A stretch of 64,000 nucleotides of DNA from Adineta vaga (taxonomy: Eukaryota > Animalia > Rotifera): the NCBI GenBank assembly GCA_021613535.1, contig CP075492.1, forward strand, positions 10,354,001 to 10,418,000, given 5' to 3'. Position numbers and translations under genes: made by a program. This document shows positions 48,426 through 55,616 of the stretch, piece by piece. Position 1 is the stretch's first letter, and every line of letters starts with the position of its first letter. Below the pieces are notes generated by a model. It was not told the origin of the DNA, did no database searches, and saw only the letters and a program-made list of their open reading frames with translations.

Positions 48426-48746
48426 AAAGACTGAAGGAACTTTTTTGTTAGCAACTATTATTGTTCACCCTTAATGTAAACGAAGAAAAATCACTTTTTA
48501 CTCCTTTCTTTCTTATTCCTGCAGCATAAGAAGAAGAAGAAAAAAAATCAGCAATGAGAATTTCTTTTCCACTTGAATCATGCAGATATTTATGTTTGAA
48601 CTCAACGGCTCTTTGCGACGTCTAGTGAGGCAATTCTAGATGAAAATAGAAAGAGAACCACCTCAGTTACTTACATATAAAAGAAAGAATTTTACTTACA
48701 ATTGTTACTTTATATTATTAACTGCTACATACACTCTCTTCTAAAC

Positions 48747-49722
48747 ATGGGTAAAAATCATTCCAAACAAAAATTTAGTCAATGGGATTTAGAACGATTT
48801 AGTAACGTTACTAGTAAGAATAGCTTTTTTTCCCATCTTCTTAAAATTATATTCGTTAATTTAGAAATTCCACGAGATAAAGTTGATGCTCTCTATCAAG
48901 AGTTTATAACATCATCGGGCAAAGATAATCTTATGGATAAGAAAGAATTTCGTCGTTTATACAAAGAAATGTATATGAATCGACAAGCTACTAGTGTAGA
49001 ACAAACAGGTCCTTCAGCACCAGCTATGTGGAGTGAACATGATTTGAATAAAATGGCCGATCATGTGTTCAAAGCTTTTGATCAAGGAGGATCTGGTATG
49101 TATGATTTTAACATACTTGCAATTATCTATTTATTCAATTGTTTTTTCGTACATTTCAGGAAAATTGACCTTCGAAAGTATGTAAATTATTCACTTCAGT
49201 CTGAGTATATATTTTATCAATTTAATAGACTTTGTCAATGCTTATCTATTACTCGATAATAGTCCAGGAATAGCATCAACAGGTGTATCAAATCGTGATC
49301 GATTGAATTATATTTTGGATCATAATAATCCAACACCAGGTAAAAACAAATTTCTTTTGATTCTTTTCAGTAGTATCATCATGATTACCTTTTTAGGCAA
49401 AGTTTCACGTGAACATGGTGAAGATTTGTTCAATCATATGAATGTTTGTTATACGTAAGTATCTTTTAATTCAAAAATGGTTTCTTTCTACTTTCTTTTT
49501 TTCGAATAGAGGGGATTCAGTAGTTGAAGGAAATGATAAAACTTGGGAACATCATTGGACTCAAATGGATGATGGCAATGGTGGAACGTAAGTGGAAGCT
49601 TACAGTTTATATGTTCGTTATTGAATATTCAATATCTTTTTAGTGTAACACAAGAGAAATTCGTTGAATATTTCACCGTTTCAGATGCATTCGCACCGAA
49701 ACTCAGACCAACAACAACATAA
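48747..49722 (+). CDS. N-myristoylation-type EF-hand protein (neuronal calcium sensor-like, divergent), several micro-exons
   Basis: MGKNHSK start; EF-like GKDNLMDKKEF, FKAFDQGGSG|KLTFE|DFVNAY and MDDGNGGT|VTQEKFVEYF. Confidence 0.75.
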
Positions 49723-49931
49723 ATAAATACATGCAACAAGACAGTCACATTTTTTCGTTGTTTCTTTTTTTTTCTACTTTTTTTGTTTTTGTAACTTTGT
49801 CTCACGTGTCACCATTGCATATTCAAATTATTTATAATCTCGCTACAGACTTTGCTAGAGAATAATAATAAATAGTGCTAACTATGTTAAAGAATTATAT
49901 TTATTTTGTATCTTATAGAACAACAAAGGAG

Positions 49932-51284
49932 TCAAAGTAAGAAGATGAAAAGTAGTAGAAACAAATAGATTGAATAAAATGGCAGAATCGATGACGAAGA
50001 AGATTTTGAATGATTGCTGCTATCGATGTATTTTATCAAAGCAGCTTGAAGATCTTTTCTTGCATTTATGAATCCTACTGTTGGATAAGTATGACCAGCG
50101 CTTAAGTTGCGAAAATATTGCTGATAAAAACGATCATTGACTAGAGGTGGTTCATTATAAGCATTACTTGACATTGGAAGAAGATAGCGAAGTGATCCAT
50201 TGTTACCAGCTTCACGGCCAACAACTGCTGCTTGCATACGAGGTGTACCCATGAACTCAACAAATGCTCGAGCAGCTTTCAACACATCATCAGACATATT
50301 ATGACGAAAAACGAATGCATCAGTGAAAAAGCTTGGCCGATTTGCAGTTGTACCTGATGGTAATGGAATCATTTTGATTTTGAAAAAATCATCCGGATCG
50401 GCATTTTTGAGAATGTGAAAAAGACGTTCAGAATAGCCAAACATTGTCATAGTCTGTTTTCTAGCAAATAATATAGACGTCATTGTAGTATTATCTTTGA
50501 ATAATCCATTCATACAATCATTCTCTCCTTCAACACGTTCACAGAGTTGTGCTAATTTACGCATAGGCTCAAACCATTCACTTCGATAAGCATGTAGAGC
50601 AAATGCTCCGACATTCGAATCCGAATGATTACTATTCAGATAGCTATTAATCCATAAGGCAGGTAGTTCCCAACTAGAATTTAGATTTCCTATCAAACGA
50701 TATGTCGCTGAAACATTCCGATTCACAACATCAGCGAGTTCACCTAAACTAGTTACTTTGGCTACTTGTTCATCACGGGTAAAAAGAAAATATCCACACA
50801 TCAAATGTGGATAACCATACACTGCCTGATTCATTTGAACCGCACTGGCTGCAGCTGGATGCCAGTCAGACGGTATATCAAAAATAGAAAATTGTGGCGC
50901 AATGAGACCAGCACTGACAACTTCACCTAGAATCACAGTATCGATTTCTACCACATCGTATTCATTTCCAGTACTTGATAACCAGGATGTCAATGTAGTT
51001 AGACTATAGAAATCAGCGTCTGAAATTAATGGTCGCAATTGGAGAGTGACATTAGGTTCGATTTTTTTGAATTCCTCTTGAATAAAACGTAATAAGTTTG
51101 CAAATTTATCATTGCCTGAATCAGGCAAATACGGATACATTGCTACTTTCAAGACTATTCCATCCAACTTCACATTTTGCGTAGCAGGCACTGTATTTGA
51201 ATTTGAATCGATTTTTACATCAAGTGTATTAGCAGTTGAAAGAAACAAAAGAAAAATAATTGTCGCAAATACATCCGTATTCAT
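49932..51284 (-). CDS. Thiaminase I (thiamine pyridinylase) with signal peptide and C-terminal GPI-type signal, intronless coding sequence
   Basis: LKVAMYPYLPD, YDVVEIDTVILG, YGYPHLMCGYFLFTR (nucleophile Cys), FGYSERL (general-base Glu) and FFTDAFV match Paenibacillus/Naegleria thiaminase I motifs. N-terminal MNTDVFATIIFLLFLSTANT; C-terminal SSSSSILPFYSIYLFLLLFIFLL*. Confidence 0.85.
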   Translation of the reverse strand: MNTDVFATIIFLLFLSTANTLDVKIDSNSNTVPATQNVKLDGIVLKVAMYPYLPDSGNDKFANLLRFIQEEFKKIEPNVTLQLRPLISDADFYSLTTLTSWLSSTGNEYDVVEIDTVILGEVVSAGLIAPQFSIFDIPSDWHPAAASAVQMNQAVYGYPHLMCGYFLFTRDEQVAKVTSLGELADVVNRNVSATYRLIGNLNSSWELPALWINSYLNSNHSDSNVGAFALHAYRSEWFEPMRKLAQLCERVEGENDCMNGLFKDNTTMTSILFARKQTMTMFGYSERLFHILKNADPDDFFKIKMIPLPSGTTANRPSFFTDAFVFRHNMSDDVLKAARAFVEFMGTPRMQAAVVGREAGNNGSLRYLLPMSSNAYNEPPLVNDRFYQQYFRNLSAGHTYPTVGFINARKDLQAALIKYIDSSNHSKSSSSSILPFYSIYLFLLLFIFLL

Positions 51285-51569
51285 TGCTTTTATTGCTATG
51301 ATGACAATGATAAATGTTGAATAAAAAATAAACTGATGACGAATTCTATTCAAATATTCTTAATATAGATACCTCTTGATCTCTTATCCTTATCAATGAT
51401 GAATAACTATTTTTTCGCAGTTGTGAAAAAAAGGATTGGCCAACTTTCGAGTTCCTTGGTCGATAAAAATTTACATAATAAATAGAACGAATCTTCTTTT
51501 CTCTTTCTCTACTGATAATGAATATAATCTTATGTTCGTTTTAATAGTTATTTATTCGAGAATAAATTT

Positions 51570-54500
51570 TCAAGATGAAGAAAGAAATTTTTGTTCTATC
51601 ATATAATCAATTGATTTCATAAAATCTTGATCTGAAATCTGAAACCATGGTAGATGACATTGCTCTTGTAGAAACTCTTTTGTTCTATCAATCGGTACAC
51701 CAATACGTTCATCTTGATCTTCATTTTGAACAAATTGAATTGATGCAATTCGATCTCTTAATGCACGATATCGATTATTTTCCGATAGGTTATTTATAAC
51801 AAATTCTTTCCATTGATTTTGTTTGATTCTATTAATCTCAATATTTGATAATTTATCAAATAAAATCTGATAAATACGTGCAAGATTCAGAGAGTTTCCA
51901 TATAAATTGAAACATTTTCCTTGACTATTTGAACACATCGATAGTGCAACAAGAACTTTTGCACAATAATCAACAGGAACGAAATGTAATTTCATATTCG
52001 TATTTTCTACAATAGTTTTCAATTCAATTTGTACACGTAATAATATATTAATAAAATCATTCAAATTAGTAAAACCCGTCTTCGTATCTGCTGATATTGA
52101 ACAAGGTCTTAGAATTGTAATATTAGCGCCAAGATCTGATGCTTGCTTCAATAATCTTTCAACAACAACTTTTGTTTGGCCATATCCATCTTTTTCATTA
52201 ATTTCGTATGATGTTAAATGAGCCCATCCATCAGAATCCTCTTTTAAATTGTTACTACGAGGCAATGCTGCTACTGAACTTGTATAAATCAATTTTCCAT
52301 GAGATTTTAATGCAAATTCAAGAATATTTAATGTTCCTTGAACATTCGATTGTTTTAAAGCTTTATATGGCATTTCTAAATGAACATATGATGCATTGTG
52401 ATAGATAAAACCGATTTCCTCGGTAAGTTTCTGATATAAATCGATCGTTAATCCAAGATGCTCTTTTGTAATATCACCAGCAATGCAAGAAATTCGATTC
52501 CAATCGATTGAATTCATTCTTTGACATTTATTTAAATCATCTTGCAAACGTTGTTTAGCATGTTGATCATCAGTTGCTCGAATAATACAATAGATCTTTA
52601 CATTTTTATCCATTTGTTGAACAATTTCAGTAATTAACAAAGGACCAAGAAAACCTACAGCACCTGTAACTAAAATATTCTTCTTTGATGATATTTTAAA
52701 ATTTGTAATCAACGTTCTTAGATGATGAGGCAAACGACATTGTTGATTCCAATTGATATCATGTACAATATGATCGGAAAGTAAATGTTTTTTTGTTAAA
52801 ATTTTATTTAAATGATTCAATTGATGATTATAAATCATCGTTGAAGTCAAAGGAATGCCTCGATCATTATAATTTTTACATAATAAACTAATTGCTAATG
52901 AATCAGCACCAATTTCAATAAACGTATTATCACCATTGATTTGTCCTTTTAGAGAACGATTTAAAATACGTTCTAAAATCTGTACAAATTCTTCGGTTAA
53001 TTGTTCGTTATTCGCAGCTTGATCAATTGATTCTTGATTGAATATTTGTGTTTTTAAATGTGAATAATATTGCGATAGAGCATGTCGACATTTCTTTTCT
53101 TTCATTAAACCATTTTGTTCATTCCAAATAAGATTTCGTTCGATAAATACGGCTTGAGGAATTTCTGGACCAGTCAAACCACAATGAACACAAAAAAATC
53201 GAATCAATTGTAACATATCAATTTCATTTAATGTTGAACCGGATTGTGATGGACATACAATAGCAATTAAATAGGAATAATTTGCATGGCCTAGTATGAA
53301 CGATGTGGAAATTTCCGATAATTGCTCGAGAATATTTTCTATATGAACAGGTGAAATCCATTCGCCCATACTGTTTTTAATCATGGTACCAGATCGATCG
53401 AGCAATTTTATTGAATTACCTTCTAATTGACCAAGATCACCTGTTCGATAGTAGGTTTTTCCTTCGATTTCAATAAATGATGGATGATTATCGATTCCCC
53501 AATAACCTTGAATAATTTTTGGTGTATGAATACAAATTTCACCTTGATGAATTCCATCAAATTCACTCATATCTTTAACCGGAAGTAATTTAACAGATAC
53601 TCCTGGATAAATGACTCCATTTTTAGAAATATTTCCACATTCACGACATCCATACATATCGACAAGATCAATTTTTAATTTATTTCGAATAAAAGACAAT
53701 ACCGTAGGCGAGATAGCTCCACCACCCGATGTACCAGTATGTACTCTACCACCTAAATCTTCACGCATTTGTTTTGCAATTTGTTCTTTTTCAATTTCAG
53801 TTAATTTATTATTCAATTTACTAAGATAATTCTTATAGATTATATTCCATAATGATGGTGTTAAACCAAGACTTGTTGGTTTAATCAGTTTGATATCAGT
53901 CCACATATTATTCAGATTAGTTAAACCTCGTGAACTTCCATATCGAATTGTGCTTATTAATGATAATAGAAGAACAGGATCAAATGGTTGATAATCAATA
54001 CGAATAAATGGAGATATTAGAGTAAAATTATCATTAGGTATGAGCAATTCTTCAGTAAAAATAGCTCCTTTTGGATATCCAGTACTACCCGAAGTTGAAA
54101 AGATAGCTGATATTGTTTTGCTCGATAGATGAATAGAAGATTGAATATTGATGGAACTCTTTTCACCTAATTCAAGTGCTTTACTTAATGAAATGATGTT
54201 GAAATCTTCATTTGTTGTTGTTGTTGTTCCCGATTGGAATTGATCTTCATTTTTATAGATAATCATTACTGATTTTTGTTGATCTGATGATAATAATGAA
54301 TAAATTTTCGAAAAATATTCTTCATCCGTAACAATTATCGAAGGCTTTATTTTTGATAGTGTATTTTGAATAGCATCGATATGTAATGAGCCATTGATTG
54401 GAACAATGACTGCTTGTGAGAGAAGTCCAGTTAATAAGCAACATATGTAAGCAGGTGATGTTGAACACATCAATAGAATCATTGGTCGATTATTATCATC

Positions 54501-55616
54501 GGGATTTCCAAGAAATCCTTTCCAATATTTTGATAAATGTGAACATTTTATAGCCATTTCACCATAACTCATTGTAATAAATTGATTTGTTTGTTGATTT
54601 TTATAGATAAGTAACGGTGAAGAATGAAATGATTTCAATGCATTTTCAATGAATTCTTTGGAAGTATTTCCACATACTACTTTTTGACAAGCAAGTATAT
54701 CAATATGTAATTGATGTTGATGATTAGAAGCAATAGAATTAAGATGACATCCAAAACAAGTACTAAAATGACATTGACAACAACACCAACGAGTATCACC
54801 CGGATAAATCACATTTTGACAGACTTCACATATACATATATCAAGTTTATAGGTAATTGCAGAATTCAATCGATATTGATGGGAAAAAAACGATCCATAA
54901 CTACCAGCTAAAGGATTTGTCCAATGACCTTGAAATTGAAGATTTTCATTTTCGAATTCACTAAATTTTCCTCGATATTCAACAAAATAGTCTGATTTTA
55001 CATATTTTTTCAAAATTTTCATATCATCTAAAGTTCCATTTCCATCTAATGTAAAGAATAGCAACGGTTGATTAGGAATATCAGCTGAATCATCAAAGTA
55101 TCCACTACCAAATAATCTCCATGTTTGATCATCTATTCGAAAAAGAGTCATACACCATCGAATTGGATTGATCGGAAGTAAAAAATCACGAAGTTCTTCA
55201 TCGGGATCTGATTGGCCAACCCATATGCCTGAAATCATATTCGACGGAAGATCCTCTTCATGAATCATCACTAGTTTTCCAAATAAATCTAAATTAACTA
55301 ATGATTTCCATGTACCATGTAGATAAATTGTACCATTTGATTTATCTTTTAATAATTTATATTGATACGAATATGTCGATTTACCATTGATTACTTCTGT
55401 CATTGATCCTTCTCGTTTAGTTCCATTATAAGTTCCATGAATAATATTTACGTCATTTTGACATAATGCTCCTCCGAATAATGATGGATATTCTTTTGTT
55501 GGTGTAAAACATAAAGTAAATTTCAATTGATCATCTTCATTCTGATTATTATTGATTGATGAATCAAGTACACGTTGACCAATGAACGTACCAGTACAAT
55601 ATATATCAGTCGACAT
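51570..55616 (-). CDS. Carboxylic acid reductase-like NRPS-type enzyme (A-T-R) with N-terminal tandem beta-rich domains and a ZZ-like zinc finger, intronless, 1348 aa
   Basis: A domain IFSTSGSTGYPKG, MYGCRECG, YYRTGDLG, IKNSMGEWISP; T domain FIEIGADSLAI; R domain ILVTGAVGFLG, HNASYVH, SNVQGT, GYGQTK, ILRPCSI; zinc finger CEVC...RWCCCQCHFSTCFGCH...HQH. Confidence 0.92.
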   Translation of the reverse strand: MSTDIYCTGTFIGQRVLDSSINNNQNEDDQLKFTLCFTPTKEYPSLFGGALCQNDVNIIHGTYNGTKREGSMTEVINGKSTYSYQYKLLKDKSNGTIYLHGTWKSLVNLDLFGKLVMIHEEDLPSNMISGIWVGQSDPDEELRDFLLPINPIRWCMTLFRIDDQTWRLFGSGYFDDSADIPNQPLLFFTLDGNGTLDDMKILKKYVKSDYFVEYRGKFSEFENENLQFQGHWTNPLAGSYGSFFSHQYRLNSAITYKLDICICEVCQNVIYPGDTRWCCCQCHFSTCFGCHLNSIASNHQHQLHIDILACQKVVCGNTSKEFIENALKSFHSSPLLIYKNQQTNQFITMSYGEMAIKCSHLSKYWKGFLGNPDDNNRPMILLMCSTSPAYICCLLTGLLSQAVIVPINGSLHIDAIQNTLSKIKPSIIVTDEEYFSKIYSLLSSDQQKSVMIIYKNEDQFQSGTTTTTNEDFNIISLSKALELGEKSSINIQSSIHLSSKTISAIFSTSGSTGYPKGAIFTEELLIPNDNFTLISPFIRIDYQPFDPVLLLSLISTIRYGSSRGLTNLNNMWTDIKLIKPTSLGLTPSLWNIIYKNYLSKLNNKLTEIEKEQIAKQMREDLGGRVHTGTSGGGAISPTVLSFIRNKLKIDLVDMYGCRECGNISKNGVIYPGVSVKLLPVKDMSEFDGIHQGEICIHTPKIIQGYWGIDNHPSFIEIEGKTYYRTGDLGQLEGNSIKLLDRSGTMIKNSMGEWISPVHIENILEQLSEISTSFILGHANYSYLIAIVCPSQSGSTLNEIDMLQLIRFFCVHCGLTGPEIPQAVFIERNLIWNEQNGLMKEKKCRHALSQYYSHLKTQIFNQESIDQAANNEQLTEEFVQILERILNRSLKGQINGDNTFIEIGADSLAISLLCKNYNDRGIPLTSTMIYNHQLNHLNKILTKKHLLSDHIVHDINWNQQCRLPHHLRTLITNFKISSKKNILVTGAVGFLGPLLITEIVQQMDKNVKIYCIIRATDDQHAKQRLQDDLNKCQRMNSIDWNRISCIAGDITKEHLGLTIDLYQKLTEEIGFIYHNASYVHLEMPYKALKQSNVQGTLNILEFALKSHGKLIYTSSVAALPRSNNLKEDSDGWAHLTSYEINEKDGYGQTKVVVERLLKQASDLGANITILRPCSISADTKTGFTNLNDFINILLRVQIELKTIVENTNMKLHFVPVDYCAKVLVALSMCSNSQGKCFNLYGNSLNLARIYQILFDKLSNIEINRIKQNQWKEFVINNLSENNRYRALRDRIASIQFVQNEDQDERIGVPIDRTKEFLQEQCHLPWFQISDQDFMKSIDYMIEQKFLSSS

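What the first reader, a model, noticed from the sequence alone, without database searches (positions are those of the whole stretch)
49932..51372. Cell-surface (signal peptide plus GPI-type tail) thiaminase I encoded in an animal genome
Seen: thiaminase-I motifs with the catalytic Cys (PHLMCG) and Glu (GYSE), an intronless CDS, a eukaryotic signal peptide, a Ser-rich spacer with a terminal hydrophobic tail, several N-x-S/T sequons, and a probable host-type 5'UTR intron (51372-51296). Established: this periplasmic-binding-fold thiaminase is characterised from bacteria (Paenibacillus, Clostridium, Burkholderia) and the amoeba Naegleria; it cleaves vitamin B1 and some toxic thiamine analogues. 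Inference: a horizontally acquired ecto-enzyme for B1 deprivation of microbes or predators, antivitamin detoxification or precursor salvage, and a possible microfaunal source of thiaminase in aquatic food webs.
Basis: partly seen in the sequence, partly recalled or inferred. Interest (0 to 1): 0.82.

Follow-up and report, generated by a model that had tools for sequence, protein, structure and literature searches.

The report
Rotifer surface thiaminase I gene
A bdelloid rotifer (Adineta vaga) chromosome carries an expressed, intron-free gene of bacterial origin for a vitamin-B1-cleaving enzyme (thiaminase I) that now has an animal secretion signal and a probable GPI membrane anchor. It is real and interesting, but rotifer thiaminase I homologues are already mentioned in the literature.

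Summary
Window 49932-51284 (minus strand) is a 450-codon intronless ORF for a thiaminase-I-type periplasmic-binding-fold protein. The catalytic Cys163 and Glu286, and the pocket residues Asp115, Tyr93, Tyr284 and Asp322, are invariant or nearly so. It has an N-terminal signal peptide, 9 sequons, and a Ser-rich spacer followed by an 18-residue hydrophobic end.

The genome is Adineta vaga (6 contigs, 100.8 Mb). The gene is not contamination: its GC3 is host-like, spliced native genes flank it, and three RNA assemblies cover it colinearly.

In trees, all rotifer copies form one clade nested among bacterial sequences (Myxococcota, Nostocales, Acidobacteriota and others). At least two paralogue lineages predate the Adineta/Rotaria split, so this was one old transfer followed by duplication. 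The GPI-type tail is shared by the Adineta and Rotaria members of this subgroup. Other paralogues lack it.

The proposed 5'UTR intron is not supported, and precursor salvage is disfavoured because no ThiE was found.

Novelty is limited. Xia 2023 lists Rotifera among thiaminase I holders. Nowell 2024 supplements annotate A. vaga foreign genes as thiamine pyridinylase, upregulated on entering desiccation and after fungal exposure. Enzyme activity, anchoring and biological role remain untested.

The parts
49932..51284 (-). Intronless CDS (450 aa plus TGA stop) of a thiaminase-I-family protein
   Evidence: RNA contigs are colinear over 50038-51319.
51222..51284 (-). Signal peptide, residues 1 to about 19-21 (hydrophobic core 5-16; the likely cleavage site after STA or ANT is an inference)
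   Evidence: Hydropathy. AF2 models a helix at 3-17 followed by a disordered linker at 20-39. No SignalP was available.
50796..50798 (-). Codon of catalytic Cys163 (PHLMC)
   Evidence: Aligns to Cys113 of 2THI. Invariant in 51 of 51 family members.
50427..50429 (-). Codon of Glu286 (GYSE), the residue that activates the Cys
   Evidence: Aligns to Glu241 of 2THI. Invariant in 51 of 51. The equivalent C148/E269 are essential in myxobacterial CcThi1 (PMC10499793).
49935..50021 (-). Ser-rich spacer (S422-S432, candidate omega site) plus 18-residue hydrophobic end (I433-L450); a GPI-attachment-type signal
   Evidence: the same layout is seen in the A. ricciae, Rotaria and metagenomic members of this subgroup. 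The Gaa1 transamidase subunit is present in the genome. No RNA contig covers this stretch.
49900..49905 (-). AATAAA polyadenylation-type hexamer 27 nt after the stop
   Evidence: Read directly from the sequence. The polyA site itself was not observed.
51296..51372 (-). Proposed 5'UTR intron (GT..AG, 77 nt): not supported
   Evidence: no joint was reported. X1 record 5 (51222-51319) continues 23 nt into it.

Best explanation
This is an Adineta vaga nuclear gene descended from a bacterial thiaminase I (thiamine pyridinylase). It was acquired once, before the Adineta/Rotaria split, and then duplicated.

Inferred pathway of the product: it enters the secretory pathway through an N-terminal signal peptide, is N-glycosylated, and forms a probable Cys248-Cys257 disulfide. 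It is most likely cleaved in the Ser-rich stretch near residues 428-430 and transferred to a GPI anchor, which would leave the enzyme on the outer face of the cell membrane.

Inferred chemistry, from the known mechanism of the family: Cys163, activated by Glu286, attacks the pyrimidine ring of thiamine or a thiamine analogue and expels the thiazole. A second nucleophile then releases the pyrimidine.

The most likely biological use is removal of extracellular thiamine, or of toxic thiamine analogues, around the animal. This would resemble the lipid-anchored myxobacterial CcThi1, which starves thiamine-auxotrophic oomycetes.

Shown here: family membership, conservation of catalytic residues, genomic integration, transcription, bacterial ancestry, and conservation of the tail. 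Inferred: activity, GPI anchoring and biological role.
For: Family:
- phmmer hits 2THI at 2.4e-8.
- The family profile hits 4KYS at 1.6e-33, 2THI at 2.5e-33 and Naegleria 4HCW at 1e-18. The best non-thiaminase binding protein reaches 1.8e-10.
- The AF2 model has pLDDT 89.8. Foldseek's top match is 3THI at 3.5e-21. VIA-align gives Z 34.9 for 4KYS and 33.7 for 3THI, against 31.7 or less for sugar binders.
- TIGR04541 is the only NCBIfam hit, at 6e-13.

Active site: C163, E286, D115, H160 and E113 are invariant in 30 rotifer-clade and 21 bacterial sequences. Y93, Y284 and D322 are nearly invariant.

Host gene:
- The window lies on contig 3 of a 6-contig, 100.8 Mb genome. The paralogue on contig 1 is identical to GenBank A. 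vaga I4U23_005153.
- GC3 is 0.25, like the neighbouring ORFs.
- The flanking gene is spliced in RNA assemblies from three studies, and the same assemblies cover this ORF without joints.

HGT: the rotifer clade has SH-aLRT support of 99-100 and is nested in bacterial diversity. The protein is 32% identical to the Pyxidicoccus homologue, E 4e-70.

Anchor: the tail layout is conserved in A. ricciae, Rotaria and metagenomic relatives. Gaa1 is present. Sequons are enriched in the rotifer clade, at 6.1 observed against 3.7 expected. In bacteria the figures are 1.0 against 1.3.

Role: CcThi1 is a lipid-anchored thiaminase I that inhibits Phytophthora (PMC10499793). In A. vaga, HGT candidates annotated as thiamine pyridinylase are upregulated on entering desiccation (2 of 6 genes, p 1.6e-5, FDR 0.027). 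One is also upregulated 24 h after fungal exposure (PMC11258130 supplements).
Against: - No activity data exist for any rotifer member.
- The TIGR04541 score of 48.5 bits is far below its 175-bit equivalog cut-off. Pfam PF22141 (Thiaminase-1_dom) is not hit even at E 10.
- No GPI or signal-peptide predictor could be run.
- No RNA contig covers 49806-50037, so translation of the tail from mature mRNA is not shown.
- The published gene ids (AVAG g5953, g18629) could not be mapped to this locus rather than to the paralogue on contig 1.
- Their enrichment does not pass the authors' own FDR threshold of 0.001.
- The rotifer needs thiamine itself, so a constitutive surface thiaminase would be costly.
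- The sister group of the rotifer clade is unresolved (support 83-87).
Confidence: 0.6

Rival explanations
1. It is the same acquired thiaminase I, but not GPI-anchored. The hydrophobic end would act as a plain C-terminal membrane anchor, or be removed or untranslated, so that the enzyme is secreted in soluble form like the tail-less paralogues.
For: Most rotifer paralogues, including A. vaga's second copy, stop at the ..KYIK-type end without a tail. No RNA contig covers the tail region. No GPI predictor was run.
Against: The tail is kept as open reading frame, with the same layout of small-residue run, short spacer and 12-25 hydrophobic residues with no charged end. This holds in A. vaga, A. 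ricciae, several Rotaria species and metagenomic relatives, despite sequence divergence. That layout is the hallmark of a GPI signal rather than a stop-transfer anchor.
Confidence: 0.2
2. It is a non-catalytic or re-purposed binding protein. This could be a surface receptor or scavenger for thiamine, its pyrimidine moiety or another ligand, or an enzyme whose real substrate is a thiamine analogue rather than thiamine.
For: The fold is that of solute-binding proteins, and Pfam sees only SBP_bac_8. Sugar binders score Z about 31. The scores lie below the curated thiaminase cut-offs.
Against: The Cys/Glu pair and the pocket Asp and Tyr residues are invariant across 51 members. The bacterial relatives include the clade of CcThi1, for which activity and the need for Cys and Glu were shown (relation inferred through the Pyxidicoccus homologue). 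The profile prefers solved thiaminases by about 23 orders of magnitude.
Confidence: 0.15
3. It is bacterial contamination or an assembly artefact, not a rotifer gene.
For: It is an intronless ORF of bacterial ancestry next to another intronless, foreign-looking gene.
Against: It lies mid-chromosome (10.40 Mb of a 20.35 Mb contig) between spliced native genes. GC is 0.37 and GC3 is 0.25, both host-like. A eukaryote-type signal peptide, a GPI-type tail and an AATAAA hexamer are present. The gene is found in DNA and RNA runs of several studies. Orthologues and paralogues occur in at least 7 bdelloid assemblies.
Confidence: 0.01
4. An alternative role: the enzyme serves thiamine-precursor salvage. 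It would cleave environmental thiamine or analogues so that the animal can rebuild the vitamin.
For: Such a role has been proposed for a bacterial thiaminase I (from my own knowledge, not checked here). Boschetti 2012 counted 7 of 9 thiamine-metabolism enzyme activities as foreign in A. ricciae. A TenA-family gene is present.
Against: No thiamine-phosphate synthase (PF02581) match was found in the whole genome, although the same search rings in 11 of 14 control genomes. There is only a 27-bit borderline ThiM-like hit. The animal therefore seems unable to recouple the two halves. Symbionts could still do so.
Confidence: 0.07

Closest known systems
CcThi1 / MXAN_4523-type thiaminase I of Myxococcota and its relatives in Nostocales and Acidobacteriota (Xia et al. 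2023, PMC10499793)
   Same: It belongs to the same sequence radiation. The protein is 32% identical over 380 residues to the Pyxidicoccus fallax member, and the rotifer clade is nested among these bacteria. The Cys/Glu pair has the same spacing (122 and 123 residues here; 121 in CcThi1). Both are extracellular and lipid-tethered. CcThi1 activity and the need for Cys and Glu were shown experimentally.
   Different: The bacterial proteins are anchored by an N-terminal lipobox (lipoproteins) and exported on outer-membrane vesicles. The rotifer protein has a eukaryotic signal peptide, extra N-glycosylation sequons and a C-terminal GPI-type signal. It is encoded in an animal and its activity is untested. 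I did not hold the CcThi1 sequence itself; the link is through a family-level relative.
Classical thiaminase I: Paenibacillus (Bacillus) thiaminolyticus 2THI/3THI, Clostridium botulinum BcmE 4KYS, Naegleria gruberi 4HCW
   Same: Same fold, and these are the best structural matches (Z 33.7-34.9). The catalytic Cys, Glu, Asp and Tyr positions align.
   Different: Identity is only 17-21%. The score is below the TIGR04541 equivalog cut-off and there is no PF22141 hit. Those enzymes are soluble and secreted or periplasmic. The Naegleria enzyme belongs to a different subgroup (profile E 1e-18, against 1e-33 for the bacterial ones).
TenA-like thiaminase I of fishes and molluscs (Richter et al. 2023, PMC9839694)
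   Same: It is an animal-encoded enzyme with thiaminase I activity and a signal sequence. It bears on the same ecological question, the source of thiaminase in aquatic food webs.
   Different: The fold and family are unrelated (all-helical TenA/PqqC superfamily), and the genes contain introns. The rotifer genome also holds a separate TenA-family gene.
Horizontally acquired, expressed genes of bdelloid rotifers (Boschetti 2012, PMC3499245; Nowell 2024, PMC11258130)
   Same: It is intronless, of bacterial ancestry, has ameliorated composition, is transcribed, and sits next to another foreign-looking gene. It is GO-annotated as thiamine pyridinylase among HGT candidates in published supplements.
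   Different: It is never discussed in the main texts. The acquisition of a GPI-type tail by one paralogue lineage is not reported there.

Membership tests
Thiaminase I (thiamine pyridinylase, EC 2.5.1.2), periplasmic-binding-protein fold | Type II periplasmic-binding (MalE-like) two-lobe fold, closest to solved thiaminases | tested here: met
   AF2 pLDDT 89.8. Foldseek's top match is 3THI at E 3.5e-21. VIA-align gives 4KYS Z 34.9 and 3THI Z 33.7, against 31.7 or less for sugar binders.
Thiaminase I (thiamine pyridinylase, EC 2.5.1.2), periplasmic-binding-protein fold | Nucleophilic Cys (Cys113 of 2THI) and activating Glu (Glu241) at the aligned positions | tested here: met
   C163 and E286 align and are invariant in 51 of 51 members. 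The roles of the residues come from PMC10499793 and from my own knowledge of the Begley/Ealick work.
Thiaminase I (thiamine pyridinylase, EC 2.5.1.2), periplasmic-binding-protein fold | Pocket Asp and Tyr residues (2THI Asp64, Asp272, Tyr18, Tyr50, Tyr239) | tested here: met
   D115, D322, Y52, Y93 and Y284 align and are invariant or nearly so. Their roles are recalled from memory; the structural papers were not held.
Thiaminase I (thiamine pyridinylase, EC 2.5.1.2), periplasmic-binding-protein fold | Sequence-profile membership (solved thiaminases far ahead of other binding proteins) | tested here: met
   The family profile hits 4KYS at 1.6e-33 and 2THI at 2.5e-33. The best other binder reaches 1.8e-10.
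NCBIfam TIGR04541 thiaminase_BcmE (equivalog) and Pfam PF22141 Thiaminase-1_dom | Score above the curated cut-off | tested here: not met
   TIGR04541 scores 48.5 bits against a cut-off of 175. PF22141 gives no hit at E up to 10. The protein is therefore not a member of these narrow models, but of a sister subfamily that also holds the myxobacterial and cyanobacterial proteins.
Thiaminase I (thiamine pyridinylase, EC 2.5.1.2), periplasmic-binding-protein fold | Base-exchange cleavage of thiamine in vitro | not testable with these tools
   Needs recombinant protein and the 4-nitrothiophenol assay.
GPI-anchored eukaryotic surface protein | N-terminal ER signal peptide | tested here: met
   Hydrophobic core at residues 3-19, the only N-terminal hydrophobic segment, with small residues before the likely cleavage site. 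SignalP was not available.
GPI-anchored eukaryotic surface protein | C-terminal signal: a run of small residues (omega site), a short spacer, then a hydrophobic end with no cytoplasmic residues | tested here: met
   S428-S432, then ILPFYS, then IYLFLLLFIFLL at the very C-terminus. The same layout appears in A. ricciae, Rotaria and metagenomic relatives.
GPI-anchored eukaryotic surface protein | Host has the GPI transamidase machinery | tested here: met
   Gaa1 (PF04114) scores 302 bits in the same genome.
GPI-anchored eukaryotic surface protein | Dedicated predictor call (NetGPI/PredGPI) and PI-PLC release | not testable with these tools
   No predictor or bench test was available.
Horizontally transferred gene in a bdelloid rotifer | Nested within non-metazoan sequences in a tree, and absent from other named animals | tested here: met
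   The rotifer clade has 99-100 support inside bacterial diversity. The only named eukaryotes among 78 hits are Adineta and Rotaria. The word-based search has limited reach, and many hits are unnamed.
Horizontally transferred gene in a bdelloid rotifer | Physically integrated in host DNA and transcribed | tested here: met

The most novel reading that the evidence does not exclude
Bdelloid rotifers display an active, bacterial-type thiaminase I on their body or egg surface through a GPI anchor and switch it on when they dry out or meet fungi. They would then strip vitamin B1 from the surrounding water film and starve thiamine-auxotrophic fungal and oomycete parasites. As a side effect, these abundant micro-animals would be an unrecognised metazoan source of classical thiaminase I in freshwater and soil food webs.
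Probability: 0.2. Interest if true: 0.7.

Novelty: new member of a known kind. Interest (0 to 1): 0.45.

Why it matters
The biological purpose of thiaminase I is a long-standing puzzle, and thiaminase in prey organisms drives vitamin B1 deficiency in fish and birds. The only animal thiaminase I so far tied to a gene is the unrelated TenA-like enzyme of fishes. A bacterial-type enzyme retained for tens of millions of years in an animal, refitted with a secretion signal, glycosylation sites and a lipid anchor, gives a tractable system for asking what extracellular thiamine destruction is for. A. vaga can be cultured and has genome, RNA-seq and desiccation or fungal-challenge protocols. The gene is also a clean example of how a foreign gene is domesticated: an N-terminal bacterial lipid anchor in the donor group is replaced by a C-terminal eukaryotic one. 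The value is tempered because rotifer homologues have already been noticed in print and nothing has been assayed.

Tried and rejected
- The search for related loci with the 51-sequence alignment failed because it had no conserved stretch. It worked with a bacterial sub-alignment.
- The structural papers on 4KYS and 4HCW were not held. A search for Cys113/Glu241 found nothing. The roles of the pocket Asp and Tyr residues therefore rest on memory.
- Synteny: tblastx of the A. ricciae, Rotaria and metagenomic loci against the window matched only the thiaminase gene itself. No conserved neighbourhood was found, and the CAR-like neighbour is not linked elsewhere.
- Co-transfer with the adjacent CAR-like gene was considered and dropped for that reason.
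- Pfam PF22141 gave no hit.
- The search of earlier findings by words found nothing.
- The careful tree did not finish in time, so quick trees (SH-aLRT only) were used. The donor phylum could not be resolved.
- The published gene ids g5953 and g18629 could not be mapped to loci, because the stored supplements hold no sequences.
- The large representative-protein search and the ESM Atlas search were not used, because the family was already clear.
The gene is intronless, so no spliced model had to be joined.
Full report
**What is there**

On the minus strand, window 49932-51284 is a single open frame of 450 codons from its first ATG (sequence). The longer ORF listed from a TTG at 51353 is an artefact of the mechanical ORF rule.

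Family and structure searches give the following:
- Pfam sees only a generic bacterial solute-binding domain (SBP_bac_8, 2.6e-9).
- A direct search of solved structures finds the Bacillus thiaminolyticus thiaminase I (2THI, 2.4e-8) and the Naegleria enzyme (4HCW, 1e-7).
- A profile built from 51 family members hits the Clostridium botulinum and B. thiaminolyticus thiaminases at 1.6e-33 and 2.5e-33, and Naegleria at 1e-18. The best non-thiaminase binding protein reaches only 1.8e-10.
- An AlphaFold model made from that alignment is confident (pLDDT 89.8, pTM 0.84).
- Its best structural matches are 3THI (Foldseek E 3.5e-21) and 4KYS and 3THI (Z 34.9 and 33.7, about 345 residues at 3.0 A). Sugar-binding proteins score Z 31.7 or less.

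The fold alone separates thiaminases from sugar binders only weakly. The sequence profile and the active site do the real work.

**Active site**

The PHLMC motif places Cys163 opposite Cys113 of 2THI, and GYSE places Glu286 opposite Glu241. Asp115, Asp322, Tyr52, Tyr93 and Tyr284 fall opposite Asp64, Asp272, Tyr18, Tyr50 and Tyr239.

Across 30 rotifer-clade and 21 bacterial sequences, C163, E286, D115, H160, E113, R366 and Y367 never vary. Y93, Y284, S285, D322 and the Cys248/Cys257 pair hardly vary.

In the myxobacterial relative CcThi1, the equivalent Cys and Glu were shown to be required for thiamine cleavage (PMC10499793). This argues strongly for a working enzyme rather than a mere binding protein, but no rotifer member has been assayed.

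The protein does not reach the curated cut-off of the narrow NCBIfam model for BcmE-type thiaminase (48.5 against 175 bits). It does not hit Pfam Thiaminase-1_dom at all. It belongs to a sister subfamily.

**Whose gene it is**

- The window is contig 3, 10,354,001-10,418,000, of a 100.8 Mb genome in six contigs.
- The genome holds one paralogue (contig 1, 45% identity). Its ORF is letter for letter the GenBank Adineta vaga protein I4U23_005153. The organism is therefore A. vaga or something indistinguishable from it.
- The ORF has GC 0.37 and GC3 0.25, within the range of neighbouring ORFs (GC3 0.16-0.24). From general knowledge, that is far from GC-rich candidate donor groups such as myxobacteria.
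- In contigs of three runs from three studies, the adjacent plus-strand gene (48687-49768) is spliced at GT..AG introns of 51-57 nt. These runs are therefore RNA assemblies, and they cover the thiaminase ORF colinearly from 50038 to 51319 with no joint. The intergenic 49806-49939 is empty in them but present in a DNA run.
- The upstream CAR-like gene ends in a poly(A) tail at 51535.

Contamination is effectively excluded.

**Origin**

A word-indexed search of 5.8 billion proteins returned 78 relatives. Every named eukaryote among them is a bdelloid: Adineta steineri, A. ricciae, A. vaga, and several Rotaria species. The rest are unnamed metagenomic proteins or bacteria. Two of the unnamed contigs look like rotifer DNA:
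- One carries split hexokinase and chitin-binding genes.
- The other shares a repeated element, 72-76% identical, with this genome.

A scan of 185,579 prokaryote genomes found relatives in Nostocales, Myxococcota (Pyxidicoccus, Sorangium, Chondromyces, Archangium), Acidobacteriota, Gemmatimonadota, Verrucomicrobiota, Planctomycetota and Pseudomonadota.

In two likelihood trees, all rotifer-type sequences form one clade (SH-aLRT 100 and 99, stem 0.6-0.8 substitutions per site) nested several nodes deep among the bacterial sequences. The immediate sister is unresolved.

Inside the clade, at least two paralogue lineages each hold both Adineta and Rotaria. The transfer and the first duplication therefore predate the split of these two bdelloid families. 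The quick tree method gives no bootstrap, and the careful search did not finish.

**Secretion and anchoring**

Only two hydrophobic segments exist: residues 3-19 and the last 15-18 residues. The model shows an N-terminal helix, a disordered linker (residues 20-39), the globular domain (43-424), a disordered Ser-rich stretch and a terminal helix.

The C-terminus reads as a run of Ser (S428-S432, preceded by an NHS sequon), a short spacer, and an uninterrupted hydrophobic end with no charged residues after it. The same layout, with different letters, ends these sequences:
- The A. ricciae orthologue, once its colinear 450-codon ORF is read. The GenBank model of 490 aa is mis-spliced at the 3' end.
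- The Rotaria magnacalcarata, R. socialis and Rotaria sp. sequences of the neighbouring subclade.
- Two metagenomic relatives.

Most other paralogues, including A. vaga's second copy, stop right after the globular domain. In the tree the tailed sequences form two well-supported groups, one Adineta and one Rotaria, inside one 12-row subclade whose internal order is unresolved.

Conservation of the architecture but not the sequence is what a GPI-attachment signal looks like. The genome encodes the Gaa1 transamidase subunit (302 bits). N-glycosylation sequons are enriched in the rotifer clade (mean 6.1 observed against 3.7 expected) but not in bacteria (1.0 against 1.3). The sequon at N329 is kept in 22 of 30 rotifer-clade rows.

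I could not run a GPI or signal-peptide predictor. No RNA contig covers the last 100 nt of the ORF, and the tool states that such holes prove nothing. I put GPI anchoring at about 0.65-0.7.

**The proposed 5'UTR intron**

GT at 51372 and AG at 51296 are present. No joint was reported there. The one RNA contig that reaches the spot runs on to 51319, 23 nt into the supposed intron. That is below the 31 nt the tool asks for, so the intron is unsupported rather than disproved. From my own knowledge, bdelloids trans-splice some mRNAs, so the AG could instead be a leader acceptor. Raw reads are needed.

**What it is for**

The closest functional analogue is CcThi1, a lipoprotein thiaminase I that myxobacteria carry on outer-membrane vesicles. 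It starves thiamine-auxotrophic Phytophthora (PMC10499793).

In the supplements of Nowell et al. 2024 (PMC11258130), A. vaga HGT candidates annotated as thiamine pyridinylase behave as follows:
- They are over-represented among genes upregulated on entering desiccation (2 of 6 genes, p 1.6e-5, FDR 0.027, below the authors' own threshold).
- One of them is in the list of genes upregulated 24 h after exposure to the fungus Rotiferophthora (p 0.03).

The main text never mentions them, and I could not tell which id is this locus.

Precursor salvage by the animal itself looks unlikely. The genome has no detectable thiamine-phosphate synthase domain, while the same search rings in 11 of 14 control genomes. 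There is only a borderline ThiM-like hit. A TenA-family gene does exist.

My ranking of roles is: thiamine deprivation of microbes (nutritional immunity) first, detoxification of thiamine antivitamins second, and salvage third. All three are inference.

**Novelty**

- Fish thiaminase I is a TenA-like protein and unrelated in fold (PMC9839694). This would be a different, bacterial-type animal enzyme.
- Xia et al. 2023 already state that thiaminase I homologues occur in Rotifera. They describe non-myxobacterial ones as soluble and cite a 2016 thesis on thiaminase sources in Great Lakes food webs.
- UniRef names the A. ricciae protein thiamine pyridinylase.
- Boschetti 2012 counted thiamine metabolism among pathways rich in foreign genes.

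What appears new here:
- The GPI-type tail in one paralogue lineage.
- The misannotation that hides it in public gene models.
- The dating of the transfer before the Adineta/Rotaria split.
- The absence of ThiE.

I rate it a new, uncharacterised member of a known kind, of moderate interest.

Noticed in passing
window 51570-55616 (-), polyA at 51535: The adjacent intronless 1348-aa gene has AMP-binding and NAD_binding_4 (terminal reductase) domains behind a long N-terminal region without Pfam hits. It is transcribed and polyadenylated (T8 loose end at 51535). It is not linked to the thiaminase gene in A. ricciae or Rotaria.
   Followed up: partly
window 48687-49768 (+): An EF-hand-type gene starting MGKNHSKQ is spliced in three RNA assemblies with 51-57 nt GT..AG introns. 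It appears to use a 17-nt micro-exon between 49096 and 49229, and two alternative donors 3 nt apart at 49584 and 49587.
   Followed up: no
L007:6781-9257 (JGI metagenome contig, bacterial): The closest bacterial relative (P0049, 37% identity, lipoprotein-type signal) lies directly after a second thiaminase-like gene that hits Pfam Thiaminase-1_dom. Both sit at the end of a YcaO / ThcOx-nitroreductase / PhyH cluster, which is a RiPP-like azole-peptide context. The same arrangement occurs on a second contig.
   Followed up: no
G000:C4:9095684-9096289 (L039): The same genome holds one TenA/THI-4 family gene (151 bits), the family to which the fish thiaminase I belongs. No ThiE domain was found anywhere in the genome.
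   Followed up: partly
L008:10001-11353 (A. ricciae CAJNOJ010000218.1); also P0002, P0003, P0005 (A. steineri): Public gene models of the orthologues are mis-spliced or fused at the 3' end (490, 572 and 626 aa). The colinear A. ricciae ORF is 450 aa and ends in the same Ser-rich plus hydrophobic tail. Database proteins therefore hide the GPI-type signal.
   Followed up: yes
L004:6879-7509 versus G000 contigs 1, 3, 4, 5, 6 (many near contig ends): A 630-bp segment of a metagenomic rotifer-like contig is 71-76% identical to a multi-copy element of this genome. Copies cluster near contig ends, for example C3 at 20.13-20.27 Mb and C6 at 0.20 Mb.
   Followed up: no
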